The position numbers were made by a program, and so were the translations under genes. This document shows, in pieces, positions 16,447 through 56,250 of a stretch of 64,000 bases of DNA. Source of the DNA: Lepidodermella squamata (taxonomy: Eukaryota > Animalia > Gastrotricha); the NCBI GenBank assembly GCA_047495785.1, contig JBLDXI010000019.1, forward strand, positions 2,356,001 to 2,420,000. Reading direction: 5' to 3'. Numbering within the stretch: position 1 is the first letter of the stretch; every line of letters starts with the position of its first letter. The notes under the pieces are model-generated. The model was given only the letters and a program-made list of their open reading frames with translations. It did not search any database and was not told the origin of the DNA.

Positions 16447-16690
16447 GTAGGAATTAGTATTCCTCACAAGATGCGCCGTGACCACTTTCGGACTTCGGTC
16501 GTCACAAAGATGCAAGTGACGCATTCATTCACATCCTTGCAATCAGTAGGTCAGATCGCTAGACCCACACTTCTGCAATCCTTTGCTTAGTGCAATCATG
16601 CCTGTTCGCAATTTCCGGTCTCGGCTAGCAAAACTCAAGCTTGGAGCAACCCAAGCTTCCTTCATTGCACGATATACCGACCTTGAAAAA

Positions 16691-17851
16691 ATGATCATCA
16701 AGTCATTGACAGCTCCTTCCAGTCCAGCTAAGAGCACGCTCAAATTCATCATTTCAATGATTCTTGCGCCAATGATCACTTGCGACAAGCAGATGTTCTA
16801 TTTATCAAACGCCCGAAGTTTGGACCTCTTAGCGAGGTGCAATCATTTTTCTGTTGAGGCTACAAACCCAAACTGCAATATTAGCAATACGTTCGACTAT
16901 CTGGACCATTCCTGCTCGAGGACACCAATTAAAACTATATTAGGCATAAAGCGATATCGCGGAATCGACGATGTAACTGAAACGTTTAGCGTATACGCTG
17001 AATTCGTATCCGAGTGGAAAGTGGAATGCAATCAATTAGGCGAGTTACGTGGCACTAGTTTCTATCCGAATGCAAGCCTTTTCTGGCAACCAGAATTCGT
17101 CCACGAAAACTCTGTCGGCGATCCAAACATGGCTGATTTTCGATCGATCTTCAGCGCTCGGATTAACGAACAGCATGTGATATTTAGATGGGAGCTAAAT
17201 GGAATATTTACGTCATTTTGTGACATCGATTTAAGGAATTTCCCGTTTGACAGACAAAGGTGCACGATACTCCTAAGATTGGCAAACGAAGCTGAAGATG
17301 CGGTAACAAAAGAAACTTCGAGCCGATTATGGGGCAAGGAGAAGACAATCAATAACTGGCAATTGAAAGACTATCATTCCTCCACTGTGACGGTTATTGA
17401 CAATCCAAGCCCTATTTTTTATTTCTATTTCAAACGCATCCCAGATTTCTACATTTGGTTTCTCATGATACCTTGTGCTGTTTTGACTTTCCTCCAATTC
17501 CTTACAATCGCCATTCACGCTTCGAAGCCTTTAAGACCTTGTTTTGCGATAACCATTCTACTTGCTATGACAGTTTTGCGAATTGAGATAAGCAACAGGA
17601 CACCAGCAAAGCCTGAAAGGATGTTACTAACGGATTACACACGTTCCTGCGAACTTCTCACGCTGTTCATTACTATGTACGCCTTTTTCACCTGCCATCT
17701 CGCGAAGAAATTCCCTAAATGGTTCAACAAGAATACGATTGTTCTTGGTGGATGGAAGGTCTCGCGCAATAGGCTGTGTGACGCTATTGCTTGTTCGACA
17801 TCACTGGTAGCATTCACCTTAGTAAATGTTCTCCTCTTCCACGATATTTGA
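16691..17851 (+). CDS. Divergent intronless Cys-loop ligand-gated ion channel subunit (LGIC-1)
   Basis: Loop A FWQPEF, Cys-loop CDIDLRNFPFDRQRC, pre-M1 FKRIPDFY, four TM helices and a very short M3-M4 loop. Start placed at the ATG at 16691; 16757 is also possible. Confidence 0.92.
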   Translation: MIIKSLTAPSSPAKSTLKFIISMILAPMITCDKQMFYLSNARSLDLLARCNHFSVEATNPNCNISNTFDYLDHSCSRTPIKTILGIKRYRGIDDVTETFSVYAEFVSEWKVECNQLGELRGTSFYPNASLFWQPEFVHENSVGDPNMADFRSIFSARINEQHVIFRWELNGIFTSFCDIDLRNFPFDRQRCTILLRLANEAEDAVTKETSSRLWGKEKTINNWQLKDYHSSTVTVIDNPSPIFYFYFKRIPDFYIWFLMIPCAVLTFLQFLTIAIHASKPLRPCFAITILLAMTVLRIEISNRTPAKPERMLLTDYTRSCELLTLFITMYAFFTCHLAKKFPKWFNKNTIVLGGWKVSRNRLCDAIACSTSLVAFTLVNVLLFHDI

Positions 17852-17987
17852 CCATACCAATATGAATGCTATGCGCAGGAATATATTGTTGTTATCGTAT
17901 TGCGAATAAAGGAAATTTGATGTCAAGGCAAACACGCCAGGCTTTGTTGAATTTCTTTCGAGATAAAGCCATGATTTGTTCTCGACA

Positions 17988-19112
17988 ATGCTCTCGAGTA
18001 TTATTATATTTAGCTTTTTATTTCAACCTTCGATCTCTTGTTTGACAAACTCTTCACTGCAGAGGGCTCGAAGCCTTCTGTCAAACTGTCCGAACCTTAG
18101 TCCTGAGAACTCGGGACCATCATGTGCCGATGATACTATGAAAGATTGTAAATTAGCTAAAGTCCAAATTACAGGCGCCGTCGGGCTGATTGAAGCCATC
18201 AACGATCGGCAACAAAGTTTCTCTGCTACATTGGATATTATGGTAGATTGGAACGGACATTGCAAGTGGCCTCGCGTTGCAGCGGAGCTAGATCCAAGGC
18301 AAAGCGCTTCGTTTCCGATTCCTAATACCATGTTTTGGCGGCCGAAATTTGTCCACGTCAATCCTTCCACCACTCACATGAGCGACAGCAATCCTTCAAA
18401 AACGAAAGTGGTGATTAAACCTTCCGGTATAATTTTCAGGTGGACCTTCAAGGCAAGACTTACCTCAACTTGCAATCTTGATGTGGCAATGTTCCCTTTT
18501 GATACTCAAGTTTGCTCTATAAGGCTAAAAATTGCCGCGCACCGAAGTTCGTATGCCCTTTACAATGTAGATCCTGCGATAGCATTTGGCGCGTATCAGA
18601 GAGAAGTTGGAAATTGGCGCATCGTCGGCAGATCTGTTTCGGTCAGTAATAAAACAACCTACGAATATGCTTTCACATTTCGAAGAAAGCCAGCGTTTTA
18701 CATTTGGAATATCATCCTACCATTTGTTGTTCTCACATTTCTGGCATTCATCGTCCTAATCTTGGAACCACGTCTCTCGGACCGGCCAGTTTTAGCTGTA
18801 ACCATTCTGCTAGCTCTGATTTTCATGGAAGCGGACTCTCTGAAATATTTGCCAATGAAACCTGGTTTTACAATCATGACTGCATTTATGAAGTGTTATG
18901 AATTTCTCACCTGTATTCTGACATTCTATTGCCTAGTCACATGCGGCCTTGCAAACTCTTATTCAGAATGGTTTGACGCTATTGTCCTCGAGAATTCCCT
19001 TTTCATACTTAAAAAAGGTCGTACCATGGACATTGCTGCCTTTACCATAATTTTATTGGCATATGGTGTCTGTATTGCGTTCTTCGTACTAATGGTCTTA
19101 TCCAATATGTAG
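17988..19112 (+). CDS. Divergent intronless Cys-loop ligand-gated ion channel subunit (LGIC-2)
   Basis: Signal peptide MLSSIIIFSFLFQPSISC, loop A FWRPKF, Cys-loop CNLDVAMFPFDTQVC, pre-M1 FRRKPAFY and four TM helices. Confidence 0.93.
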   Translation: MLSSIIIFSFLFQPSISCLTNSSLQRARSLLSNCPNLSPENSGPSCADDTMKDCKLAKVQITGAVGLIEAINDRQQSFSATLDIMVDWNGHCKWPRVAAELDPRQSASFPIPNTMFWRPKFVHVNPSTTHMSDSNPSKTKVVIKPSGIIFRWTFKARLTSTCNLDVAMFPFDTQVCSIRLKIAAHRSSYALYNVDPAIAFGAYQREVGNWRIVGRSVSVSNKTTYEYAFTFRRKPAFYIWNIILPFVVLTFLAFIVLILEPRLSDRPVLAVTILLALIFMEADSLKYLPMKPGFTIMTAFMKCYEFLTCILTFYCLVTCGLANSYSEWFDAIVLENSLFILKKGRTMDIAAFTIILLAYGVCIAFFVLMVLSNM

Positions 19113-19338: not shown

Positions 19339-21997
19339 CTAAGTCGAAATTTCAACCACCTGAGTTACGTGAGCCATTGGGATAACCCTTGTTACCCTGC
19401 TACCAATTGGGCCGCTATTACGGTGACGGCCACGGAACACTGTGTTCATAGTCTGCAGACTTAATGTTTCTTTCATATCGCTCGACTTGACAAACTTTGT
19501 TCCAACAGCCATTGCAGCGGTCAACGGAGCGATTATCAGCAGGAAAGCTGAGATGGTTATGATCACATACTGCTCATCTTTATACTTTAATATCGCGACA
19601 AAGCAAGCGGCAAGAATGAGGAGAAGGAACTGAGGAATGGACGTGGTCAGCATAGAAAAATGGGCAACATTACTCAGCAATTTTGGCTTCCTTTTAACCA
19701 ACCCTCTTAGCTGGATAGCGTGATTGGCAATGTAAGCTAACATGATGAGTTGGCTGATTCCTGATATCCCCATCAAAATTTGCGACGGCAGATGTTGCGA
19801 TGAGAATAACGCTGACATCGCATTACATTTTTGGCGTTTGAATTGAAATGACAGACTAATGTCATTTGGCGACGATTCCTCACTGCTAACTTCTTCAGAG
19901 CTTGCCAGTGGATGCGATAGGAATAGGGCTACTAGCAGCGTTGTATGAAAAATTGCCCATTCCGCCGCTGTAAGGTAATTAGAATGAGCCCGGTGACCTA
20001 AGCCTTGTCTCAGCTTCGCGAATAGACTGCCAACGATGGCGGATACGCCAATGCAGATCATGAAAGCAATGGCATAGCAATTTGGTTCAAGGTTAGATTG
20101 CAGTTCCACAGGGATAGCGTACACTTGCCCGATCGCTATACCAAGTCCTGTCAAAAGAATTGTTAATAATTCAATGAGAACAACCTTCGTCATTTACCCA
20201 TTAATGTGGCGTAGTCAATTTTGTCAAAATATTGCTTCCCGCTGAGTGGGCTGATTCTTTTTCCATTAATACCAAGTATGACAAGTGCAGCGATCTCAAC
20301 ACTGGCTGCAGCTTTCAGACCAACGCTTGGGCCAAAGTCAAGCAGAGGCAACTTCAATCCGATAACTACGAGGCGGTCTTTTGGCGGCATGCCGTCATTG
20401 CTTTGCCAGTCGATATTTTGCTTCATCAGAATCACAGTTTCATTCATTAGCAAATGACCTATCAATTTCTTTTTAGTAGTTTTGCCGTCTTCAGAATAAT
20501 GCTGCTGGTAAAGAACAGGCACATAGGAGACGGAATAGTCTGAGATTTTTGCATTTGGATCGTATCTGAAAATACCGGATTGGCCGGCCAGAGTAGTGCG
20601 GAAGAAAGCGTCCTTCAAAATGTTGAGGATTTCAGCACCCTTCTGCTGGAAGAATGGTCGATTAGTTGATAAATCAGCAAGGGTCATATTTCTTTTCCTC
20701 AACATTTTTTCAGTCTCATTCAAAGCAAGACCTAGAAACATGTAGCGATCATAGTCGCCGGGTACAAAGACTTCTATTCCATGAAGCTGTCCGGGATTAT
20801 CGATTTTCGACTTGATTTCTGAGAATAATTGAATTTGTTTCAGGCCTGTTTCATCAGCATAATTAGGATCAAGATCTGACATCGTCATATCGCTCGAAAC
20901 TATCATATGATTTCGAACTTCGAAAAGCATCTTCGGAGTGCACCAAGATGCCAGGAACGAAGGAACCTCTGGAAAAAGAATATTCAATCAACTCAACAAT
21001 TGAGGTCTCTTAATCACATAAAATTCTTTGACATTCATTACCTGAAGTGTCGTCGAATGTGTAAAAGGCCATCGCAAGCAAAACGTAACCCTTCCCATAG
21101 AGTCCATATCGGTGCAGGTAACAAGCGAAAGTTGGCATCATCCAAGTGAAGATTTGAATAATTCTTGGACCGTTGGCTTTAAGCTCTTTGAAAACTTCGT
21201 CCATCTCATGTTCGCTGAGGTCCCATATGGTGCTAGAGACCGCACCGTAATACAACAACGAAATGCCGTTTTTCTCGAGATGGTCTACCATAATGTCACT
21301 GAGCTGAACGTTGAAGATGTCGTTATCTCCAATTATAGCGACCCGTTTCCAACCAACCGTTTGAATAAAGCGAGACCACGCCCTCAAGTAGATTTCCGCG
21401 CAGAATCCCATAGGAAAGAAATTGGGATACAACCGTCGCTCAATTATTCCTCGTGGTCCTTCCAGGTCGAAAGAGAAACCGAAGAGATTCTGGGGTCCAA
21501 GGGTCATCGCGACTATTCTCTGGGCGAACATTCCGCAGTCTGGCAAAATGACGATAGGGAGTCGATTGTCCACCTCATCGTTGTCTCGTAGTTTTTGAAC
21601 CTGAAGGATGCCATTCTCATTCGTGCACTGAAATACAATTCGAATCAAAGCTTTTACATGCCGATGGAAAACGTTATCTCACCTCATTGTCAACTAGCTC
21701 GAAGATGATTTCGTAATCTCGAAGCCAATATGGATAGGTCTTGCGGAGTCTATCCAGGGCGAGCTGGGCTGTTAGATAGGTTCCCGGACCGACTGCCCAC
21801 CACGAGCCTGAGTACAGGACTGATGTCACAATTTTGATGACGGTTCTAGCCCTTCCTTCAGTGGTGTTAAGTTGGCTTGAACCGATTTGAGGTGGCATTC
21901 GGGGGTCATTCCACGGGATTTTCGTTAGAGAAGCTGGAACTGCTAGGAATGCGAGTATAAAAAGGCACGCACGCGTTCTCATTTTTCTCTCAAGCAT
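19339..21997 (-). CDS. GABA-B-receptor-like orphan class C GPCR, copy A (~826 aa); exons 21997-21683, 21627-21042, 20968-20198, 20147-19339
   Basis: Signal peptide; Venus-flytrap motifs (DNE|CTNENG, LPDCG, RRLYPNFF, GWKRVAII, GLYGKGYV); stalk WQSNDGMPPKD with no cysteine-rich domain; 7TM with TM3 CYAIAF...GSLFAKL. Three 50-73 nt GT-AG introns keep the frame (2481 nt total). Confidence 0.88.
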
Positions 21998-27431: not shown

Positions 27432-30120
27432 CTAAGCTGAAGTTTCAACCACCTGAGAAATGTGAGCCAGATCCAAACCAGAAGCAGCCATTGGAAAAGC
27501 TCTTGATACCCTGGTAGTATTTTGGCCACTATTGAGACGACGGCTTGCATCTAACGCCGTGCCCATTGACTCGCCGTGCTCACCGAGCTTCATCAAACTC
27601 AAGTTGGCTTTCACTTCGCTCGGTTTCAGAAATTTGGTTCCAACAGCCATTGCAGCGGTCAACGGAGCGATTATCAGCAGGAAAGCTGAGATGGTTATGA
27701 TCACATACTGCTCATCTTTATACTTTAATATCGCGACAAAGCAAGCGGCAAGAATGAGGAGAAGGAACTGAGGAATGGACGTGGTCAGCATAGAAAAATG
27801 GGCAACATTACTCAGCAATTTTGGCTTCCTTTTAGCCAACCCTCTCAGCTGGATAGCGTGATTGGCAATGAAAGCTAACATGATGAGTTGGCTGATTCCT
27901 GATATCCCCATCAAAATTTGCGACGGCAGATGTTGCGATGAGAATAAAGCCGAGATCGCATTGCATTTTTGGCGTTTGAATTGAAATGACAGACTAATGT
28001 CATTTTGCGACGATTCCTCACTGCTAACCTCTTCGGAGCTTGTCATTGGATGCGATAGGAATAGAGCTACTAGCAGCGTTGTATGAAAAATTGCCCATTC
28101 CGCCGCTGTAAGGTAATTAGAATGCGCATGGCGACCCAAGCCTTGTCTCAGCTTCGCTAAAAGACTGCCAACGATGGTGGACAAGCCGATGCAGATCATG
28201 AAAGCAATGGCGTAGCAGTTAGGTTCAAGGTTAGACTGCATGTCCAGAGGGATAGCATAAACTTGCCCGATCGCTATACCAAGTCCTGTCAAAAGCGTTT
28301 TTAAAAATTCAGCGAGAACGGCTTTTGTCTCTTACCTATTAACATGGCGTAGTCAATTTTGTCAAAATATTGCTTCCCGCTGAGTGGGCTGATTCTTTTT
28401 CCATTAATACCAAGTATGACAAAAGCAGCAATCTCAACACTGGCTGCAGCTTTGAGACCAACGCTTGGACCGAAGTCAAGCAGAGGCAACTTCAATCCGA
28501 TAACTACGAGGCGGTCTTTTGGCGGCATGCCGTCATTGCTTTGCCAGTCGATATTTTGCTTCATCAGAATCACAGTTTCATTCATTAGCAAATGACCTAT
28601 CAATTTCTTTTTAGTAGTTTTGCCGTCTTCAGAATAATGCTGCTGGTAAAGAACAGGCACATAGGAGACGGAATAGTCTGAGATTTTTGCATTTGGATCG
28701 TATCTGAAAATACCGGATTGGCCGGCCAGAGTAGTGCGGAAGAAAGCGTCCTTCAAAATGTTGAGGATTTCAGCACCCTTCTGCTGGAAGAATGGTCGAT
28801 TAGTTGATAAATCAGCAAGGGTCATATTTCTTTTCCTCAACATATTTTCTGTCTCATTCAACGCAAGACCTAAGAACATGTAGCGATCATAGTCGCCGGG
28901 TACAAAGACTTCTATTCCATGAAGCTGTCCGGGATTATCGATTTTCGACTTGATTTCTGAGAATAATTGAATTTGTTTCAGGCCTGTTTCATCAGCATAA
29001 TTAGGATCAAGATCTGACATCGTCATATCGCTCGAAACTATCATATGATTTCGAACTTCGAAAAGCATCTTCGGAGTGCACCAAGATGCCAGGAACGAAG
29101 GAACCTCTGGAAAAAGAATATTCAATCAACTCAACAATTGAGGTCTCTTAATCACATAAAATTCTTTGACATTCATTACCTGAAGTGTCGTCGAATGTGT
29201 AAAAGGCCATCGCAAGCAAAACGTAACCCTTCCCATAGAGTCCATATCGGTGCAGGTAACAAGCGAAAGTTGGCATCATCCAAGTGAAGATTTGAATAAT
29301 TCTTGGACCGTTGGCTTTAAGCTCTTTGAAAACTTCGTCCATCTCATGTTCGCTGAGGTCCCATATGGTGCTAGAGACCGCACCGTAATACAACAACGAA
29401 ATGCCGTTTTTCTCGAGATGGTCTACCATAATGTCACTGAGCTGAACGTTGAAGATGTCGTTATCTCCAATTATAGCGACCCGTTTCCAACCAACCGTTT
29501 GAATAAAGCGAGACCACGCCCTCAAGTAGATTTCCGCGCAGAATCCCATAGGAAAGAAATTGGGATACAACCGTCGCTCAATTATTCCTCGTGGTCCTTC
29601 CAGGTCGAAAGAGAAACCGAAGAGATTCTGGGGTCCAAGGGTCATCGCGACTATTCTCTGGGCGAACATTCCGCAGTCTGGCAAAATGACGATAGGGAGT
29701 CGATTGTCCACCTCATCGTTGTCTCGTAGTTTTTGAACCTGAAGGATGCCATTCTCATTCGTGCACTGAAATACAATTCGAATCAAAGCTTTTACATGCC
29801 GATGGAAAACGTTATCTCACCTCATTGTCAACTAGCTCGAAGATGATTTCGTAATCTCGAAGCCAATATGGATAGGTCTTGCGGAGTCTATCCAGGGCGA
29901 GCTGGGCTGTTAGATAGGTTCCCGGACCGACTGCCCACCACGAGCCTGAGTACAGGACTGATGTCACAATTTTGATGACGGTTCTAGCCCTTCCTTCAGT
30001 GGTGTTAAGTTGGCTTGAACCGATTTGAGGTGGCATTCGGGGGTCATTCCACGGGACTTTCGTTAGAGAAGCTGGAACTGCCAGGAATGCGAGCATGAAC
30101 AAGCATTCATACATTTTCAT
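27432..30120 (-). CDS. GABA-B-receptor-like orphan class C GPCR, copy B; exons 30120-29821, 29765-29180, 29106-28336, 28285-27432
   Basis: Same exon structure as copy A at a constant 8138-nt offset. Nearly identical ectodomain, with a diverged signal peptide and C-terminal tail. Confidence 0.88.
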
Positions 30121-47600: not shown

Positions 47601-49625
47601 ACTTGATATGAAAACAAGCTTTCATTGAAACCGGCTCCAGAAAAGATTTTCTAGCAAAAAAGTTGATTAGAAAATTAAGGGATGATAATATTTATTCATC
47701 GGTTACATATAGTTCTGATATCACCCATAATGCATTAAGACCTAAATCTCAGCATTCCGATTCAAGTTTCATTCTGTTTCTGTCAACTTGATCTCAACTT
47801 CATCAGGTCAAATCTAGTGATGCGCAAAGATAATTTGTTGTTGAAAAGATTAAATGGGCCAGTAAATCGTAATCGAGTCGAGTTAATCGCGATTTTTCGC
47901 CCACAGATCGATTAATCAAATCGGTGAAAATAAGGAAATTAAATGTGAAAATCAATCAGTCCATCAGCACCGATAATTGCGGAATAAGCAGTTTGCAGGT
48001 TTTAAAATTGAAATAACTAATATTTTAGTCGAATCATGTCAAAATATCAGGAATTGATTGAAATTTAAAAGGGATATAGTGAAATCATTGAATTCCGTAC
48101 CAACTTATTCCAATCACTTCCTGATACCTCGAGTCAGGTTGAAACATATTCAATATCGACTTCCAAGTCTGCCGATGGCGGGAAACGGAAAATCACTAAT
48201 TTGTAGAATCGATACTTGATATCGATATCGGCTTGGATGGCCAAAGTATAACTCAAGACCGGCTATTGACCAAAATGTGGTAAAATATAGATACAGCGGT
48301 TAGGCGTGACTATAAATAGTAAAATTCTAGAAAGGTGTGATACTGAAAACCACATTATAGAAAAGTTTACCGCTCATTGTCAAATATTGCGTTGGACCTT
48401 TATTTGCGATATTGAAATTATTTGAAAACTTGAAGACGTTGTGATGCACATTTTTGTTAATTATCGACTTTCCCATTTCAGAAATAAAGCCTACTGGTGG
48501 AATCGAGCGCATTGAAGAGGTCGACGAAGAGGCTCACATCGGCGGCTTGCGAGCAAGCGACGCCGCGTCCAGCTCAACGAAAGGCAGCAGAAGCCGAAGC
48601 ATTTCCAGCTTCATGAAGCGCAGGAAGAGCCAAAAATCGCCGAGCAAAAGCCCCGGCAAGGAGGGCGGCGACCAAACACCCGCGTTCAGCCACCTCGGCG
48701 AACAGTTGCGTCAGACGCTAGAATCTCGCCGGCAGAGCGTTGAGCAGAAATTAAAGGCGCAAAAATCGAGCGGCTCAGAAACGCCGGTTTCGACGTCGAT
48801 CGAGGTGTCAAGTTCTACTCAGGTCTTGCAGCAGGAGCCGCAAACTCTATCCAGACCGCCAGCACCAGGCGGGGGGTACCGGGGTCAGAGGAAGATGTCG
48901 GATTCGTCGCCGCAACAACGGCGAAGGTCGTCGAGGTATTCGTCGCATAAGCAACCGGGCGATGCGGCGGATCCGACGAAGGCGCTGTCGCCGGATAGCC
49001 TAGTGCCGCGCGACCTTGTGCCAGCTAGTCCGACTTCGTACCCTGCGAGCAGTTTTGGCGGCACGCCGCAGAGGCGAATCATTTTACCGCCGCAGATATT
49101 GCCGGCTTTGTTAGCTCAAGAACGCATGCAGGAGCACATCAATGAACAGCTCAATGATTTAGAATCGTAAGTTTTTTCCCTATCTTCATGGTATCGGTAA
49201 AATCACTGATTTTTGTAAAATCGATACTTGAAATCGATATCGATCGATTTTTCGAAATTAGAATTTTATATTCAAATTCTCAAACAAATTTATCGGTAAA
49301 ATCACTGATTTTTAAAATCGATACTTGGAATCGATTGATATCGATCGATTCTTCAAAATTCGATTTCAAAATTTTTCATCTCTATTTTTGGACATTTTAC
49401 ATTCATTTATGTTTGCATTGCAGGCGCCTTGGTCAATTCGAAGACAATGTCAGTAAAACTGTAAGTGAGATTTTCGCACTTCTGGGCCTTCCGCAGCAGT
49501 GCCGCATGACTGGGCAAGCGATACCTGAAACAGCGATTCTCGATCAACCTCCGCCGCCTACCTCATCACGCCAAACAACGTCCACTTTCGTAAAATCGCC
49601 GTCTCTACAGCACACGACTGTTTAG
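35681..49625 (+). CDS. erg: ERG-subfamily (KCNH2/6/7-like) voltage-gated K+ channel with no visible PAS domain. Exons: 35681-36185, 37707-37918, 40101-40166, 43266-43646, 44664-45138, 45703-45902, 46260-46712, 46858-46878, 47098-47266, 48482-49166, 49424-49625
   Basis: [13 protein letters not shown]; [10 protein letters not shown]; S4 [23 protein letters not shown]; HWLAC; filter [12 protein letters not shown]; C-linker [19 protein letters not shown]; CNBH domain VRALSYCDL. All junctions are GT-AG and frame-compatible. The N-terminal exons are less certain. Confidence 0.93.
39373..39978 (+). CDS. Candidate alternative first exon B of the ERG channel (202 aa, Ser/Pro-rich)
   Basis: ATG in AAAATGG context. 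The ORF ends AAT|GTACTT in phase 0, compatible with the exon at 40101. Confidence 0.65.
41616..42083 (+). CDS. Candidate alternative first exon C of the ERG channel (156 aa, Pro-rich)
   Basis: ATG in ATCATGG context. Donor GAG|GTAAAT in phase 0, compatible with the exon at 43266. Confidence 0.7.
49192..49360 (+). repeat. Two tandem copies of a dispersed ATCGAT-rich repeat
   Basis: tatcggtaaaatcactgatttt..aaaatcgatactt.gaatcgat occurs at ~49192 and ~49291. Related copies lie at ~7225, ~45255 and ~48185, and in reverse at ~1850 and ~4590-4705. Confidence 0.75.
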
Positions 49626-50019: not shown

Positions 50020-51476
50020 ATGATTTGGCTGTTGATTATCGCCTGTCTTCTTGGAGAGAACGGTGGGGCATCTGCCGAGGCAAATACAACAATTGAGGTT
50101 TGATTTAATCTATCATTCGACGATGTTGAACATCTTAGTTGATCTCTCAGGATGTTGGCTCACCTTCGCCAATAATGGCATCGAAGTACCCTAACAATTA
50201 CTCGATGAGCGGAAATCCAGGTGAGTGAGATTCCTTACATATTCAAGTTGTATTTCAAAGCTCTTGAATTTACGTAGATATTGGAGAGGTTGCACGCATA
50301 TTGAATCGATTTGACCAGTCGACAACGCAAACACTACAGCAGCTCCTCGGAACCACTGACGTAGCTGACACAGAGCTGCCTCTAGCGAAGCTTACCGCGA
50401 AACAGCTGCTGCAGAGGTGTGAGGACTTCTCTCCGACTCGAGCTGCCCCGCCATCACGCGACACATTCACCGTCAAAGTGGCCTTCAGCGTTGATAAGTT
50501 GAACGAAATCAACACTGTAGATCAAACGATATCAATCACCGGCGCTGTTTTGCTGTCATGGGTCATTGACACATGCCCACGAGAAGGCACTAGTCTTAGC
50601 GAAGCTGGTCGAAAAGTCGAGCAGTTGTACATCAGCAATACAAAAGAAACCTGGACGCCACCGTACAGATTCCTAAACAGCGCCAGTGGAACAATCTACA
50701 TGCAGTCGACAGAACATTTCGATGAAGATTTGTTGGCAACGACATCGCAGTCTTCTGCCTCGGAAAATAGGACTCTCGAGTTCTTCTGGATCAAAGACGG
50801 TCTATTCGTCGCTTCATGCCAACTTGACCTCACTAAATTTCCCTATGACACACAGACTTGTGTCTTCCTCTTCTCGATGAATCGAGCTGTTGGTTTGATA
50901 AAATTCGACACGCCTCTGTTTTTGTGGGAAAGTGGCGAGGTCTCTGATTCTTGGATCTACGAAGGTCATACTTCTGGGCTGAAAGATTCCTACTACAAAG
51001 GGAAAATTGTGAGCACGGCGTATTTTGCTATCACCTTGAAACGAAACCCTCAATATTTTGCTGTGAATCTCATCTCGCCCTGTGCCTTGTTGTTTCTGAT
51101 GCAAATCGCCTCTTTCATGTTACCGCCCGCTTCTGTAGAAAGACCGGCCTTTTCCATGGCGGTTCTGCTAGCCTTTAATGTCGCACAATCGACGGTTATC
51201 GACGCGATTCCGAAAACAGCTGAGCGAATTTTAATCGTGGACTACGTTTCTGTTTTGATGTGGCTATGCACTGCTTGCACCTTCTATCACGCTGCTGCAT
51301 GCTGTTATGTCGCTGCAACCCGGAAAGGTAGACTGAGCAAGATGGGAGGAGTGAATGATGATTTCGGCATTTTGGGATATATTGGCCTTATTCGATGTTG
51401 TGATATTTTATGCGCCCTTTTCAGCGCTGTTGCTTTCTTCGGTTTACACGGTTATCTTGGTTTCATTGATGTCTGA
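50020..51476 (+). CDS. Divergent Cys-loop channel subunit LGIC-3 (short form); exons 50020-50097, 50151-50220, 50278-51476
   Basis: Signal peptide MIWLLIIACLLGENGGASA; WTPPYRFLNS; Cys-loop CQLDLTKFPYDTQTC; LKRNPQYF; four TM helices. Introns of 53 and 57 nt. Confidence 0.92.
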
Positions 51477-51947
51477 GGATGCCTTATTACTTTGTTACAA
51501 TCCAGTTGTTACAGTTAATCTCAAGCGAATAAAAATGTATCATATGGAGTGTAAAATCGCAGCGCTTTTTTAAATCATCGCAAAAAATGGAGAAATCAAC
51601 GGCAGAAACCATACTCTGTGCTCAGCTGGCGAGACTTTTGCGCATAGTTTCTCCTCAAATCATCGATTGAAAACTTTTTAAACTCAATTGTCTTTTTCAG
51701 GAACAATTATTATGCACCTAACGTAAAACTGTTAATTGAATGTTCCATGTGTTTATAAATAATTTATAATTTTCGCTCGCTTTTTCAACCTCGGGGTTAC
51801 TACACGACTCAAACTAAGGCTGTTTTTTGTTTTCCAATTTCGCCCACGGAAATCGAGGTCTGCAGAAGTACATAAAAAACAAAGGTAGCCTTCATTCCCG
51901 GACTGAAAAACTGGCTAGCAGTCGCTACTTCTAAATCAACCCTGACG

Positions 51948-54900
51948 ATGATACGCATCACATTTCTGCTTGCAATCAGCTTTCAGCCGGGTAACTTTTC
52001 CAATATTATTGCTTGGAATAGATTAAACTATGTTTCGTTTTACAGGTATAGCACCTGCTCCAGTGCCCGATACTGCATCATTTCCCCTGCCTTACCTATG
52101 GTCTGGGACTCCGATATACCAAGCGCAAAACTCGTTCGATGTGATTAACCCAGGCGTTGGCAATACAACATTTTTCACGCTGAAAATCGTGGGTACGACA
52201 CCTAATGGCTACCAAATGAACGAGGTCGTCGCAACAGCAACTACCGATAACAGCAGAATTGCCCAAAACGAAGTGAGAATTGCTTCATAAACGTGCGTTT
52301 CGAATTATTTCTTGATTTTTTTTCTGTGAAGGCTGTGCCAGTTAATTTAACAAATTGGAGGGCTGAAATCGACATAATGACGACTTATGACACAACTCTT
52401 AACATCACAGGCTGGTTCGGAGTCACATTCTCGACCACTTTCTCAAATTACAGTAGGTTTTAGTCACATCTTCTCTCATTGGTGAGGGTGAACTTATATT
52501 GATTAAAAAGCCTATCAGATGACTGGAACCGATATTTGCTACACCGTTATGTCTGGAGTCAATGGACCAGGATTTTTCCAAGAAATTCAACAAGGCGGAA
52601 GATTTTACAGTACGACAGCTTTGGGTGGCGTTGTGCCATACACTCCGACCATCACTTCTGCCCCAGCTTGCGGAAGTTCCACTGTCTTAACTTCATCAGG
52701 AAAAAGTGATTATCGCATCATAGTGCAGATGAATAATGACAAAGCCACGGTACAATACAGTTTAAAAGATGACCCTGTTTCTAGCTTTTGATCGTTAGGT
52801 CGCTATAGCAGCTCTCCCCGCAAACGGAACAACGCCCGCAAGCACCTGTTTCTCGGACGTCTTGATGACTGGATCAGGTGCTGCTACTGGAAGTGGTTTA
52901 GCAAAGATAAGACTTCTCGCAATGTGCGGCATGGCTGGTAATAAATGCATAATCTAGCGATTTGCCACCATTATTACGCAATTTTTCTTAGGAAATACGA
53001 CAATCAGAAAATTCTATTTTTGGCAACTGACTTCAAGCCCGCCAACCACTTCAACTAGCTCGACTTCAACGACCACTACAACGACACGTACAACAACAAG
53101 CACATCGACAACAACTACAACGAGTCCGTCCACCTCAACTACGCCAACCACCACGACCACAACAACCCCTAGTACCACAACTTCATCGACTTCAACAACA
53201 ACGACGACCAGTCCATCCACCTCAACTACATCAACTCCTTCGACCTCAACCAGCACGACTACTACAACGACCCCTAGCACCTCAAGCTCGTCGACGTCGA
53301 CTACAACGGCGAGCCCGTCAACCTCAACTACATCTACTGATTTGACTTCAACAACCACAACTCCCAGTACTACGAGCACATCGACTGAATCCACCTCAAC
53401 TACAACAAGCCCTTCTACAACATCATCTTCGACACCTAACCCGATGACTAGCAGTTCGACGGAGACAAGTACAATGGATTCCTCGACCTCAGTACCCTCA
53501 TCTACTACGGATTTACCATCAACATTGACTACGTTAGATATTTCATCAACAGATGCTTCAACGTCATCTATCTCGAGTTCAACGACTTCCACCCAAGTTT
53601 CATTGACCAGCAGTTCCACACCTCAAGCAATGTCAACTTCAAGTTCACCCTCAACAGCCGGTTCAACCGCATCTGAATCAACGAGCCTTTCGACGGCAGC
53701 TGTGACGGCCGCGTCGTATACATTGACAGGAATAAGCAACTCAAGTTCAACCATGACATCTCCAGCGGTTATATCGAGCTCTTATTCACAGACAGCGATA
53801 TCATCCAGCAGCGCTACAGGAATTGGCAGCTCAAGTTCATCTTTGACTCCAACAACTCTGACAGTTGCCTCGAACTTTTATTCGCCGACAGTGATAACGA
53901 CAACAATTCCAGCTTCACTAACGTCCAGTAGCTTACAAGTTGTTGGTAGTACTACGACGCCCACCTCTACTACAAAATCAGAGCCGACTTCAGTTTTTAC
54001 AACTTTATCGACAGCAGCTATGGTAGTATTGAAAAACAGCTTTTAAAAAATTCGATATTAATGCATTGACTTGCTTGGTACAGGTGGTGGCGAGTTCAAT
54101 CTCGACAATCACAAGCATTCCAGGGGCATCGGCTGAACCTACTACCCCAATTTTCTCGTCGAGCTTATCTGCTAACTATTCAGCAGGAGGAAGTCCAGGT
54201 ATGTTTACATCATAACTGCTTCAGATCATTCAATCATCTGGTTTTTATTTCAGACAACGATGAAGTGAGAAAAGTGCTAACACGATTCGATCAATCAACC
54301 ACTCAGTCCTTGCAACGGCTCCTGAAGTTCACGGACGAACACACTGAACTTCCCCTCGCAAACATTACCGCTAAACAGTTGCAGAAACAATGTGACGACT
54401 TCATCCCGATGAGAACTGCCCCGCCCTCAGACGAAACTTTTCTTATCAAGGTGGCCTTCGGCGTGGATAAGCTGAACGAAGTGAACACGGTCGACCAGAC
54501 TATTTCAATCACCGGAGCTATGCTTCTTTCCTGGACTGTTGGCACATGTCCTATTGATAGCGTTGACATCTTTTCAGATCGACCAATTGAACAGCTTTAC
54601 GTAGCCCAGGCCAGCGAAGTTTGGTCGCCGCCATACAGGTTTCTAAACAGCGTGACCGGGACAATCTACATGCAAACGACTGATGAATTTGGCGAAGATT
54701 TGATTGCTTATACCTCTCAAACTATTGGCAAGCCCAACAGGACCTTGGATTTCTTTTGGATTAAAGACGGTCTATACACCGCGTCATGTCAGCTGACCCT
54801 CGGAAAATTCCCTTACGACACTCAGACCTGTGTATTCATTTTCTCGATGAATCGAGCAATCGGGTTGATTGCGTTCGATACTCCGATTTTCCTCTGGCGG

Positions 54901-55452
54901 GCTGGGAATGAATCAGATTCCTGGATCTATGAAGGCCATACATCTGGGTTGAAAACTTCGTACTACAAAGGGAAAATTGTGAGCACGGCGTATTTTGCTA
55001 TCACTTTGAAGAGGAATCCTTACTACTTCGCTGTGAATCTCATCTCTCCCTGTGCACTGTTATTCCTGATGCAGATCGCTTCTTTCATGTTACCGCCTGG
55101 TTCAGTTGACCGGCCAGCGTTTTCAATGGCCGTTCTACTCGCATTCAGCGTGGCTCAGTCTACAGTAGTGGGAGCGATTCCGAAGTCGGCTGAACAAATA
55201 TTGCTGGTTGATTACGTTTCAGCTTTGATGTGGCTCTGCACTGCTTGCACCTTCTATCACGCTGCTGCGTGCTGCTATACATCATTCATGCGCCATTCGA
55301 GGCGTGTGTTGAACGTTGAGTTGATGGAAAATCCTTCGATCTGGGGATACATTGGCCTGGTCCGTTGCTGTGATATCCTGTGTGCTGTTCTGAGCACTGT
55401 TGCTTTCATTGGGTTGCATGCTTACTTGGGGTTTTTGAATGTCGGGATATAA
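51948..55452 (+). CDS. LGIC-4: DOMON-like domain + mucin-like Ser/Thr stalk + Cys-loop channel fusion (~1037 aa). Exons: 51948-51990, 52046-52272, 52332-52452, 52511-52749, 52799-52937, 52992-54022, 54084-54198, 54254-55452
   Basis: Seven 49-61 nt GT-AG introns join the exons into one 3114-nt stop-free frame. It contains GWFGVTFS...MTGTDIC, a long Ser/Thr tract, Cys-loop CQLTLGKFPYDTQTC and four TM helices. The channel exon has no signal peptide or start ATG of its own. Confidence 0.8.
53030..54022 (+). repeat. Low-complexity Ser/Thr/Pro coding repeat (mucin-like; TTTTSPSTSTT-type units)
   Basis: Dense ACN/TCN/AGY codons with recurring ccgtccacctcaactac units. Confidence 0.9.
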
Positions 55453-55896
55453 GACGATTTCGCATTGACAAGATTTCTTTTTATTAGAGATATTAGTTGA
55501 AAATAAAACTGAAAAAGAATGAGCTTGAAGACATTTTCAACCCCAGAATTTTCCGGAAATCGCACTTGTTCATATTGTCACATTTAAATCATCAAATTTG
55601 AATGGCTAGTGCATTTTTTTTAAACTGTAAAAATGGTAAAACATAACAGGAAAGCGTACTGCTCTACACGTGTTTCGTTTTTTCAAAGTTGCCGTGAGGC
55701 GTAATTAAGGCCACTTCCCAATTTGTATATCTTTAGCGTGGTGTGACCACGTATTGTTGGCCAGCCATGCTGACACGAAAGATGAAAATGTGCTCGCGAA
55801 GAAAAAAACAGCTTTCAGCGGCTATAAAAGACGCGAAATTTGGAAAGAAAAATCATTCGATTATAATTTCACTATTTTGGACTTCAACTTGAGATA

Positions 55897-56250
55897 ATGC
55901 GGTCTTCAACTACCTTGGCTCTGCTCGGCGTTTTTGCCGCTCTGCTCATTGTTGCTCAATCTGCTCCGGCTAAACCAGCTGGTGGCACTCCACCACCAGG
56001 CACTCCGCCATCTGGAACTCCGCCACCTGGTACGAAACCAACTGGCGATCCGCCATCCGGAACCCCGCCGTCGGGTAGTAAGCCGACAGGTACCCCACCA
56101 TCAGGCACTCCACCCGCTGGAACCCCTCCTAACGGAAAGCGGTAGGCTATTGGAGTTTGCTCTTTTTGTTCTCCTAATATTCTCAATTTTTCACACAGCC
56201 CCGACGGACCACCTCCATCAACTACGACGACTGCCAAGGCGTCGAGCTAA
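55897..56250 (+). CDS. Small secreted Pro/Gly-rich protein, paralog 1; exons 55897-56141 and 56199-56250
   Basis: Signal peptide MRSSTTLALLGVFAALLIVAQS, then GTPP[PSA] pentapeptide repeats, a phase-2 intron and RPDGPPPSTTTTAKASS*. TATAAAA at 55823; AATAAA at 56365. Confidence 0.85.

What the first reader, a model, noticed from the sequence alone, without database searches (positions are those of the whole stretch)
51948..55452. Cys-loop ion channel carrying a DOMON-like head on a ~380-aa mucin stalk (candidate tethered-sensor channel)
Seen: the ORF track shows disconnected pieces, but seven 49-61 nt GT-AG introns splice them into one 1037-aa frame. The order is signal peptide, ~250-aa beta-rich domain, Ser/Thr stalk, then a full pentameric channel (ECD plus four TM helices). 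The channel exon starts at a phase-1 acceptor (TTTCAG|AC at 54254) with no leader of its own, so it needs upstream exons. Established: GWxGxxFS...MxGxD is the core DOMON motif. Animal Cys-loop subunits normally begin directly with the ECD, and extra N-terminal domains are known mainly from prokaryotic pLGICs such as DeCLIC. Inference: the stalk could hold a ligand- or surface-binding domain out through mucus or glycocalyx, giving a chemo- or mechano-tactile channel. The weakest junction is the AAAAAG acceptor at 52510.
Basis: partly seen in the sequence, partly recalled or inferred. Interest (0 to 1): 0.93.

Follow-up and report, generated by a model that had tools for sequence, protein, structure and literature searches.

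The report
Cys-loop channel with stalked extra head
An invertebrate gene most likely encodes a nicotinic-receptor-type ion-channel subunit that carries an extra 250-residue outer domain on a roughly 90 nm sugar-coated stalk, a layout most channel papers say animals lack but which a lobster genome paper and other parts of this scan have already reported in related forms.

Summary
Eight exons (51948-55452, + strand) joined by seven GT-AG introns of 49-61 nt give one 1037-aa frame. The order is signal peptide, a 254-aa Cys-containing head, a 368-aa Ser/Thr stalk (67% S+T), then a complete Cys-loop channel.

No transcript was available, so the fusion is inferred. It is well supported:
- The channel exons have no usable start codon of their own.
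- There is no poly(A) signal between stalk and channel.
- The closest relatives (30-37% identity, unnamed metagenome proteins) carry N-terminal domains plus Thr-rich linkers in the same uninterrupted ORF as the channel.
- The head itself matches (BLASTP E=6e-5, shuffle z=8.3) the first N-terminal domain of one such relative.

The "DOMON" label is not supported. There is no Pfam hit, and the motif residues are not kept in the one homologue. I could not fold the spliced head.

The claim that this layout is essentially prokaryotic is out of date. The 2021 lobster genome paper reported lectin/pentraxin-bearing Cys-loop receptors. This scan has also noted head-plus-stalk Cys-loop genes at several other places in this same genome.

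What is new here is an orphan head type and an adjacent short paralogue, which suggests how the fusion arose. What the head does, and whether it affects gating, is untested.

The parts
51948..51990 (+). Exon 1. Holds the start codon and a 15-residue signal peptide and ends in phase 1.
   Evidence: The hydrophobic core ITFLLAISF has mean Kyte-Doolittle 2.5. The donor is CGG|GTAACT.
52046..52272 (+). Exon 2. N-terminal part of the head.
   Evidence: An 86-codon ORF. It aligns with the region just after the signal peptide of the relative P0167.
52332..52452 (+). Exon 3. Head, including NWRAEIDI and GWFGVTFS.
   Evidence: NWR.E is matched by NWRMEFRL in P0167.
52511..52749 (+). Exon 4. Head, including MTGTD and VNGPGFFQ.
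   Evidence: The intron before it (52453-52510) is used by all 288 minimal stop-free paths.
52799..52937 (+). Exon 5. C-terminal part of the head.
   Evidence: It aligns with P0167 up to the last strand, FYFWQL against FYMFKL.
52992..54022 (+). Exon 6. Holds the last 13 head residues, then the Ser/Thr/Pro stalk. Its last codon is ATG.
   Evidence: The stalk (residues 270-637, exon 6 plus exon 7) is 67% S+T, has no Cys and only 12 charged residues in 368. It contains imperfect 87-102-nt tandem repeats.
54084..54198 (+). Exon 7. Ser/Thr-rich linker that looks like a vestige of the ancestral channel's signal-peptide end and pre-ECD linker.
   Evidence: GASAE...PI..S....NYS.G.P aligns with exons A and B of the paralogue. 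There is no in-frame ATG upstream.
54254..55452 (+). Exon 8. Complete Cys-loop channel subunit: two N-terminal helices, the ECD, M1-M4 and a short M3-M4 loop.
   Evidence: Pfam Neur_chan_LBD scores 32.4 bits against a cutoff of 26. The AF2 model has pLDDT 89.8. The top Foldseek matches are ACR-23, alpha7 nAChR and GlyR. The Cys-loop reads C-x13-C with FPYDTQTC.
55502..55507 (+). AATAAA poly(A) signal, 50 nt after the stop codon.
   Evidence: There is no AATAAA or ATTAAA in 53950-54260.
50020..51476 (+). Tandem short paralogue of 448 aa. Its exons are 50020-50097 (own signal peptide), 50151-50220 and 50278-51476. An AATAAA lies at 51528.
   Evidence: It is 71% identical to the target channel, with dN 0.21 and pS 0.72, which is saturated.

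Best explanation
The locus is one gene for an orphan, cation-type Cys-loop (pentameric) channel subunit. Its N-terminus is extended by a secreted, about 250-residue, disulfide-containing globular head and a stalk of about 370 residues that is probably heavily O-glycosylated.

Shown or strongly indicated:
- The architecture itself.
- The channel fold.
- Purifying selection on the channel.
- The same 'head, then Thr-rich linker, then channel' layout in single ORFs of relatives.
- Homology of this head to the N-terminal domain of one such relative.

Inferred origin: a stand-alone channel like the neighbouring short paralogue lost its own start and signal peptide. It was then joined through the 54023-54083 intron to an upstream head-and-mucin gene.

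Inferred mechanism: five subunits would form a channel with up to five heads held as far as about 90 nm above the membrane. A linker that long and flexible cannot pass on a conformational change. The head therefore most likely works as a capture or anchoring module. It would bind a glycan, matrix, cuticle or microbial surface and so place or concentrate the channel or its stimulus. Gating would stay with the channel's own extracellular domain, whose agonist is unknown because the acetylcholine-type loop-B tryptophan is absent. Gating by pull on the tether is possible but less likely.
For: Gene model:
- The model is frame-consistent, with AT-rich GT-AG introns.
- All minimal stop-free paths use the acceptor at 54083.
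- Intron 7 has the same position and phase in the paralogue.

No separate channel transcript is apparent:
- Every ATG in 53900-54270 opens 8 codons or fewer.
- No poly(A) signal lies between the stalk and the channel, whereas both true gene ends have AATAAA 50-52 nt after the stop.
- The stretch equivalent to a signal peptide in exon 7 is only weakly hydrophobic: 1.8, against 3.1 in the paralogue.

The channel is real and maintained:
- Its 398-codon ORF is intact although synonymous sites are saturated, with dN 0.21.
- Pfam, PDB sequence matches and the AF2/Foldseek result all agree on a pLGIC.
- The M2 helix has Asp at -1', Arg at 0' and Leu at 9'.

Relatives:
- 11 of the 23 best representatives have N-terminal extensions of 147-709 aa.
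- P0010, P0002, P0003, P0015 and P0167 are each one uninterrupted ORF on their contigs.
- They have proper signal peptides, LamG_3 or EGF hits, and Thr-rich linkers.
- The P0010 head folds as a ConA-like jelly roll.
- All long forms fall in one well-supported clade that contains the target.

Head homology: target head residues 27-269 align with P0167 just after its signal peptide. The Smith-Waterman score is 83 against 35.7+-5.7 for shuffles (z=8.3, 0 of 2000 shuffles as high). BLASTP gives E=6e-5 with 28% identity over 177 aa.
Against: - No transcript or cDNA evidence exists for this gene. The species' proteins were not found in the databases searched.
- The exon 6-exon 7 junction has no counterpart in the paralogue.
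- Exon 6 ends in an in-frame ATG preceded by a decent acceptor. According to earlier scan notes (unchecked), the genome uses spliced-leader trans-splicing, so a separate short channel mRNA is conceivable.
- The head's fold, ligand and any effect on gating are unknown.
- The head homology rests on a single relative at 31 bits.
Confidence: 0.72

Rival explanations
1. The locus gives two products. One is a secreted head-and-mucin protein that ends at the TAA at 54044 when intron 6 is retained. The other is a separate short channel. The short channel's mRNA would start by spliced-leader trans-splicing or from an internal promoter just upstream of the ATG at 54020, or at the 54084 acceptor with an AUG supplied by the leader. 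Either way the product would begin M-VVASSISTITSIPGASA. This could coexist with the long form.
For: - Exon 6 ends exactly with an in-frame ATG, preceded by a T-rich tract and ACAG|CAG.
- M plus the first 17 residues of exon 7 has almost the length of the paralogue's signal peptide and ends in the same GASA|E.
- Earlier scan notes report genome-wide spliced-leader trans-splicing and other genes with ATG-less in-frame extensions. These notes are unchecked.
Against: - The would-be signal peptide is Ser/Thr-rich and weakly hydrophobic: 1.8, against 2.5-3.1 for real ones in this window.
- There is no poly(A) signal for an upstream gene.
- The stalk ORF is in frame with the ATG.
- Relatives encode head and channel in one ORF, and the head is homologous to one of those heads.
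Confidence: 0.15
2. The downstream channel copy is a dead or dying duplicate that lost its start codon. The long open frame through the stalk is then fortuitous.
For: There is no start codon of its own. No expression evidence was found.
Against: - The 398 codons have no stop or frameshift even though synonymous sites are saturated, and dN is 0.21.
- All invariant family residues are kept: the Cys-loop, the M1 Pro, Arg at 0' and Leu at 9'.
- The splice sites are intact.
Confidence: 0.05
3. The channel exons use a leader from elsewhere. For example, the paralogue's signal-peptide exon (50020-50097, ending in phase 0) could be spliced across about 4 kb to the phase-0 acceptor at 54083.
For: The phases are compatible.
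Against: It would need read-through of the paralogue's poly(A) site at 51528 and an intron of about 4 kb, in a gene family whose introns are about 50-60 nt.
Confidence: 0.03
4. An assembly indel hides an independent start. The ATG at 54061 is one base out of frame with exon 7. In frame it would give a 25-residue signal peptide.
For: ATG CAT TGA at 54061 lies 23 nt upstream of exon 7. The frame-0 reading LTCLVQVVASS is hydrophobic.
Against: There is no homopolymer run there that would invite an indel error. DNA similarity of this stretch to the paralogue's start region is not above chance.
Confidence: 0.03

Closest known systems
Lobster 'chimeric' Cys-loop receptors with C-type lectin, pentraxin or LDLa domains (Polinski et al. 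2021, PMC8221624)
   Same: Both are animal Cys-loop subunits (PF02931/PF02932) carrying extra extracellular binding-type domains. Both belong to an expanded orphan family. Relatives of the present gene carry LamG/ConA-like jelly rolls, which is the fold class of pentraxins.
   Different: The head here has no Pfam family. That paper does not describe a 368-residue mucin-like stalk. The paper calls the class unique to lobster and related crustaceans, whereas the nearest named relatives of this channel are from bivalves, a hemichordate and Macrostomum. Orthology with the lobster genes was not tested.
DeCLIC and other prokaryotic pLGICs with N-terminal domains (PMC9897478)
   Same: A pLGIC with beta-rich accessory domains N-terminal to the ECD.
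   Different: The two jelly-roll lobes of DeCLIC pack against the ECD and affect gating kinetics. Here the head is separated from the ECD by a long flexible stalk. This is a eukaryotic gene with a true Cys-loop. [quoted passage not shown]
Adhesion GPCR ADGRG4/GPR112 (PMC10687090)
   Same: An N-terminal beta-sandwich head at the tip of a very long Ser/Thr mucin-like stalk on a signalling membrane protein. It has been proposed as a shear or distance sensor. That paper gives a mucin pitch of 2.5 A per residue.
   Different: It is a 7TM receptor with a GAIN domain and tethered agonist, not an ion channel. There is no sequence relationship.
Other head-plus-stalk Cys-loop genes of this same genome
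   Same: The notes describe the same layout: lectin-like head(s), a mucin stalk and a Cys-loop channel, in tandem families.
   Different: Those heads are described as LamG- or L-type-lectin-like and are often duplicated. Here there is one head of a different, orphan sequence family, and an adjacent headless paralogue. I could not read those loci.

Membership tests
Cys-loop / pentameric ligand-gated ion channel | Subunit fold: a beta-sandwich ECD followed by four TM helices | tested here: met
   The AF2 model of exon 8 has pLDDT 89.8 and pTM 0.84, with ten ECD strands and four long helices. Foldseek against the PDB gives E about 2e-20 to ACR-23, alpha7 nAChR and GlyR, covering about 390 columns.
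Cys-loop / pentameric ligand-gated ion channel | Signature Cys-loop: two Cys 13 residues apart with F-P-x-D | tested here: met
   CQLTLGKFPYDTQTC is in exon 8. The Cys, Pro and Asp are invariant or nearly so across 50 family members.
Cys-loop / pentameric ligand-gated ion channel | Pfam models at their curated thresholds | tested here: met
   Neur_chan_LBD scores 32.4 bits against a cutoff of 26. Neur_chan_memb scores 21.7, below its cutoff of 28.1. The TM part is confirmed by the fold and by alignment to nAChR M1-M3.
Cys-loop / pentameric ligand-gated ion channel | Pentameric assembly and ion conduction | not testable with these tools
   This needs expression and electrophysiology. The pore-lining residues Asp -1', Arg 0', Leu 9' and Val 13' suggest a cation channel.
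Nicotinic-type agonist site | Loop-B Trp and loop-C vicinal Cys of the aromatic box | tested here: not met
   In the alignment with Torpedo alpha, the loop-B Trp position falls in SMNRAIG, which has no aromatic residue. Loop C has no CC.
DOMON domain | Match to a DOMON-family profile (PF03351 and relatives) | tested here: not met
   No Pfam family at E<=1 for any head exon, nor for the intact homologous domain P0167:1-170 or the whole of P0167. The spliced head as one piece could not be submitted.
DOMON domain | Conservation of the GW.G..FS ... M.G.D motif among homologues | tested here: not met
   In the only detectable homologue the aligned residues are NFGVLLS ... SSNTV.
DOMON domain | An 11-strand beta-sandwich fold | not testable with these tools
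   The spliced head has no reference, so it could not be folded.
Mucin-like (PTS) domain | A long stretch dominated by Ser/Thr/Pro, low in charge and Cys, often in imperfect tandem repeats | tested here: met
   Residues 270-637 are 67% S+T and 74% S+T+P, with 0 Cys and 12 charged residues. Tandem repeats of 87-102 nt are present. O-glycosylation itself is not testable here.
Eukaryotic Cys-loop receptors with extra N-terminal binding domains (lobster-type chimeric LGICs) | An extra extracellular domain in the same polypeptide as PF02931/PF02932 | tested here: inconclusive
   For this gene it is inferred from splicing only. It is shown in single ORFs for the relatives P0002, P0003, P0010, P0015 and P0167.
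Eukaryotic Cys-loop receptors with extra N-terminal binding domains (lobster-type chimeric LGICs) | The head is a C-type lectin, pentraxin or LDLa domain | tested here: not met
   The target head has no Pfam hit. Relatives have LamG_3 (59 bits in P0015) or an EGF-like domain.

The most novel reading that the evidence does not exclude
The head and stalk act as a working tether. Binding of the head to a surface, particle or matrix, together with relative movement, would pull on the N-terminal helices of the ECD and gate the pore. That would make this a contact- or force-gated pentameric channel. The adjacent short paralogue would co-assemble with it to set how many tethers each pentamer carries.
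Probability: 0.1. Interest if true: 0.9.

Novelty: new variant of a known kind. Interest (0 to 1): 0.55.

Why it matters
Structural papers on pentameric channels still state that N-terminal accessory domains do not occur in eukaryotes (PMC9897478). The lobster report of lectin- and pentraxin-bearing receptors has had no functional follow-up that I could find.

This locus adds three things:
- It carries a head of an unknown sequence family on an unusually long mucin-like stalk.
- Its nearest named channel relatives are from bivalves, a hemichordate and a flatworm, not crustaceans. This suggests the layout is more widespread or has arisen more than once.
- It sits next to a 71%-identical headless paralogue. 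That gives a natural with-and-without pair for testing what such heads do to trafficking, clustering or gating.

Tried and rejected
Head identity and head relatives:
- Pfam on each head exon found nothing.
- PDB sequence searches with exon 2, exon 4 and P0167:1-170 gave only noise.
- The target head against all 171 fetched proteins gave no hit except P0167.
- A profile comparison of the head with the LamG-like heads and with the P0005/P0016/P0017 heads gave nothing.
- An apparent profile-profile link to P0016/P0017/P0005 (P=3e-5) vanished when the two groups were aligned separately. I rejected it as an artefact of the joint alignment.
- An alignment of P0167 with the separate head exons was misaligned by MAFFT and was not used.

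Searches for relatives and transcripts:
- The word-based protein search with the channel exon found one weak hit.
- The same search with P0008 (channel region) found one relative.
- The same search with the P0167 head found none.
- Both metagenome scans (channel exon, P0167 head) found nothing.

Other dead ends:
- DNA similarity between the paralogue's start region and 54040-54140 is not above chance. The idea that the ATG at 54061 is the ancestral start therefore stays unsupported.
- Rfam found nothing in the window or in the five loci searched (L001-L005).
- Looking up the sample names in the literature found nothing.
- The organism could not be identified.
Full report
WHAT IS THERE. On the + strand, eight exons (51948-51990, 52046-52272, 52332-52452, 52511-52749, 52799-52937, 52992-54022, 54084-54198, 54254-55452) are separated by seven GT-AG introns of 55, 59, 58, 49, 54, 61 and 55 nt. 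The introns are AT-rich, at 27-35% GC. Joined, the exons give 3114 nt, or 1037 codons plus a stop. The product reads as follows:
- Residues 1-15 are a signal peptide.
- Residues 16-269 are a head with 4 Cys and 6 N-glycosylation sequons.
- Residues 270-637 are a stalk with 67% Ser+Thr, no Cys and only 12 charged residues. It is built partly from imperfect 87-102-nt repeats.
- Residues 638-1037 are a complete channel subunit.

IS IT MORE THAN CHANCE? A stop-free path alone is weak evidence. If any GT...AG of 40-120 nt is allowed, many 5-intron paths exist. If introns are restricted to 45-65 nt, the minimum is seven introns and exactly 288 paths exist. The 1063-nt head segment can be crossed with five such introns. 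Only 4 of 200 shuffles and 14 of 300 random window segments do as well.

THE CHANNEL. Several lines of evidence agree that exon 8 encodes a complete pLGIC subunit:
- It matches Pfam Neur_chan_LBD at 32.4 bits against a cutoff of 26.
- It matches nAChR and 5-HT3A chains of the PDB at E about 1e-12.
- With an alignment of 50 family members, it folds at pLDDT 89.8 into a full pLGIC subunit.
- The best structural matches are ACR-23, alpha7 nAChR and glycine receptors.
It has the Cys-loop (C-x13-C with FPYDTQTC). Its M2 helix has Asp at -1', Arg at 0', Leu at 9' and Val at 13', which is the cation-channel pattern. The loop-B tryptophan and the loop-C Cys pair of acetylcholine sites are absent, so the agonist is unknown.

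THE NEIGHBOUR AND THE JUNCTION. Immediately upstream lies a three-exon paralogue (50020-50097, 50151-50220, 50278-51476; 448 aa). It has its own strong signal peptide and is 71% identical to the target over the channel. Its second intron sits at the same codon and phase as intron 7 of the target, which validates the exon 7/8 junction.

Target exon 7 aligns with the end of the paralogue's signal peptide (GASA|E) and its short pre-ECD linker. The position of the hydrophobic core, however, is taken by VVASSISTITSI, with mean hydrophobicity 1.8 against 3.1. Between 53900 and 54270 no ATG opens more than 8 codons. There is no AATAAA or ATTAAA between the stalk and the channel, whereas both the paralogue and the target have AATAAA 50-52 nt after their stop codons. 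Synonymous sites between the two channel exons are saturated (pS 0.72) while dN is 0.21. Both copies have therefore been kept by selection for a long time. Taken together, the channel exons need upstream exons, and the only ones available are the head and stalk.

RELATIVES. An exhaustive HMMER search found no close orthologue. The best hit was 36% identical. Among the 23 best representatives, 11 have N-terminal extensions of 147-709 residues before the channel. None of the more distant hits do, apart from tandem-channel proteins. All the close relatives whose sources I looked up (20 of those 23) are unnamed proteins from ENA metagenome assemblies.

P0010, P0002, P0003, P0015 and P0167 are each one uninterrupted ORF on their contigs. 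The contigs are eukaryotic: they carry Mediator, TFIIS, CUB-trypsin and LINE genes. The extensions begin with good signal peptides. They contain LamG_3 (59 bits in P0015; weak in P0008 and P0010) or an EGF-like domain. In P0010, P0014 and P0019 they end in Thr-rich linkers. The P0010 head folds (pLDDT 72.6) as a ConA-like jelly roll. Its matches are to lectin-like jelly-roll subdomains and to the Emp47p carbohydrate-recognition domain.

In a maximum-likelihood tree, all 12 long forms lie inside one supported clade of 25. The target and its paralogue sit inside a supported 14-member subclade of which 9 are long. Some 'short' members are incomplete gene calls. P0013 (358 aa) shares a 90% cluster with the 812-aa P0167.

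THE HEAD. The target head has no Pfam family and no PDB sequence match. It does have one relative, the first N-terminal domain of P0167. On contig L006 that gene has an upstream signal-peptide exon (280-564) and a 48-nt GT-AG intron, giving 915 aa. This shows the metagenomic organism has the same kind of short introns.

Target residues 27-269 align with P0167 residues 32-262, from just after the signal peptide to the last strand before the linker. The Smith-Waterman score is 83 against 35.7+-5.7 for 2000 shuffles (z=8.3, none as high). BLASTP gives E=6e-5 with 28% identity over 177 residues, and two of the four Cys align. A homologous head is thus covalently joined to a homologous channel in one ORF of another organism. 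This is the strongest argument here that the target's head and channel also belong to one protein.

The same alignment argues against the DOMON reading. GWFGVTFS...MTGTD aligns with NFGVLLS...SSNTV, and Pfam finds no DOMON in P0167. I could not fold the spliced head, so its fold remains open.

HOW IT PROBABLY WORKS (inference). At the mucin pitch of 2.5 A per residue quoted in PMC10687090, the stalk could hold the head up to about 90 nm from the membrane. A pentamer would carry up to five such heads. Such a linker cannot carry an allosteric signal. The head is therefore more likely a capture, anchoring or positioning module for a glycan, matrix, cuticle or microbial surface, as the lectin-fold heads of relatives suggest. 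Gating would be left to the channel's own ECD. A pull-to-open tether is possible, and I rate it at about 10%.

RIVALS. Earlier notes of this scan, which I could not check, say this genome trans-splices a leader onto most mRNAs. Exon 6 ends in an in-frame ATG preceded by a T-rich tract and ACAG|CAG. M plus the start of exon 7 has the length of a signal peptide. A separate short channel mRNA is therefore conceivable, and I put it at 15%, possibly alongside the long form. Against it stand the weak hydrophobicity, the missing poly(A) signal and the comparative evidence above. The remaining rivals are each about 5% or less:
- a dead duplicate;
- a shared leader exon from the paralogue;
- a one-base assembly error at the ATG at 54061.

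WHAT IS KNOWN. [quoted passage not shown] However, the 2021 lobster genome paper (PMC8221624) reported 66 Cys-loop receptors with C-type lectin, pentraxin or LDLa domains, some highly expressed in brain and antennules. It called the class unique to lobster and related crustaceans. The scan has also noted lectin-like-head-plus-mucin-stalk Cys-loop genes at several other places in this same genome.

The nearest named relatives of the present channel are from bivalves, a hemichordate and Macrostomum lignano, not from crustaceans. I found no paper linking DOMON or mucin stalks to pLGICs. The closest functional analogue is the adhesion GPCR ADGRG4, which has a pentraxin-like head on a Ser/Thr stalk and is proposed as a shear sensor.

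VERDICT. This is a real and most likely single gene. It is a new variant (an orphan head, a very long stalk and an adjacent headless paralogue) of a kind that is already reported but little studied. The DOMON label and the tethered-sensor mechanism are not supported by anything tested here.

Noticed in passing
window 54020-54022: The last codon of the stalk exon is an in-frame ATG directly before the donor (ATG|GTAGTA). What follows the intron has the length of the paralogue's signal peptide and the same cleavage motif. This may be a relic start codon or a second, internal start.
   Followed up: partly
window 19339-21997 and 27432-30120, minus strand: Two copies of a four-exon gene about 8 kb apart. 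Its exon ORFs look like a class-C (GABA-B/ANF-receptor-type) receptor; that reading is mine from the translations and was not checked with any tool. The 212-aa exon is identical in both copies.
   Followed up: no
window 16583-17851 and 17976-19112, + strand: Two more single-exon, very divergent Cys-loop genes only about 125 nt apart. They are 21-24% identical to the target channel. Their nearest relative in the tree is a Logan protein, P0027.
   Followed up: partly
window 55897-56145, + strand: A small ORF with a signal peptide followed by GTPPSGTPP-type proline-rich repeats, about 450 nt downstream of the channel gene.
   Followed up: no
window 49190-49360: An intron near the 3' end of the upstream multi-exon gene (an EAG-type K+ channel by my reading of its exon ORFs, not tested with a tool) contains two copies of an about 90-nt unit (...ggtaaaatcactgattttt...atcgata...).
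   Followed up: no
L006 280-612: The metagenomic relative P0167 has an uncalled signal-peptide exon and a 48-nt GT-AG intron. The called proteins P0016, P0017 and P0167 all begin at an internal 'MEF', so their true N-termini are probably missing from the database entries.
   Followed up: partly
protein clusters of P0013 / P0167: A 358-aa 'short' representative and an 812-aa long form share one 90% cluster. Counts of long forms made from representatives are therefore underestimates.
   Followed up: partly
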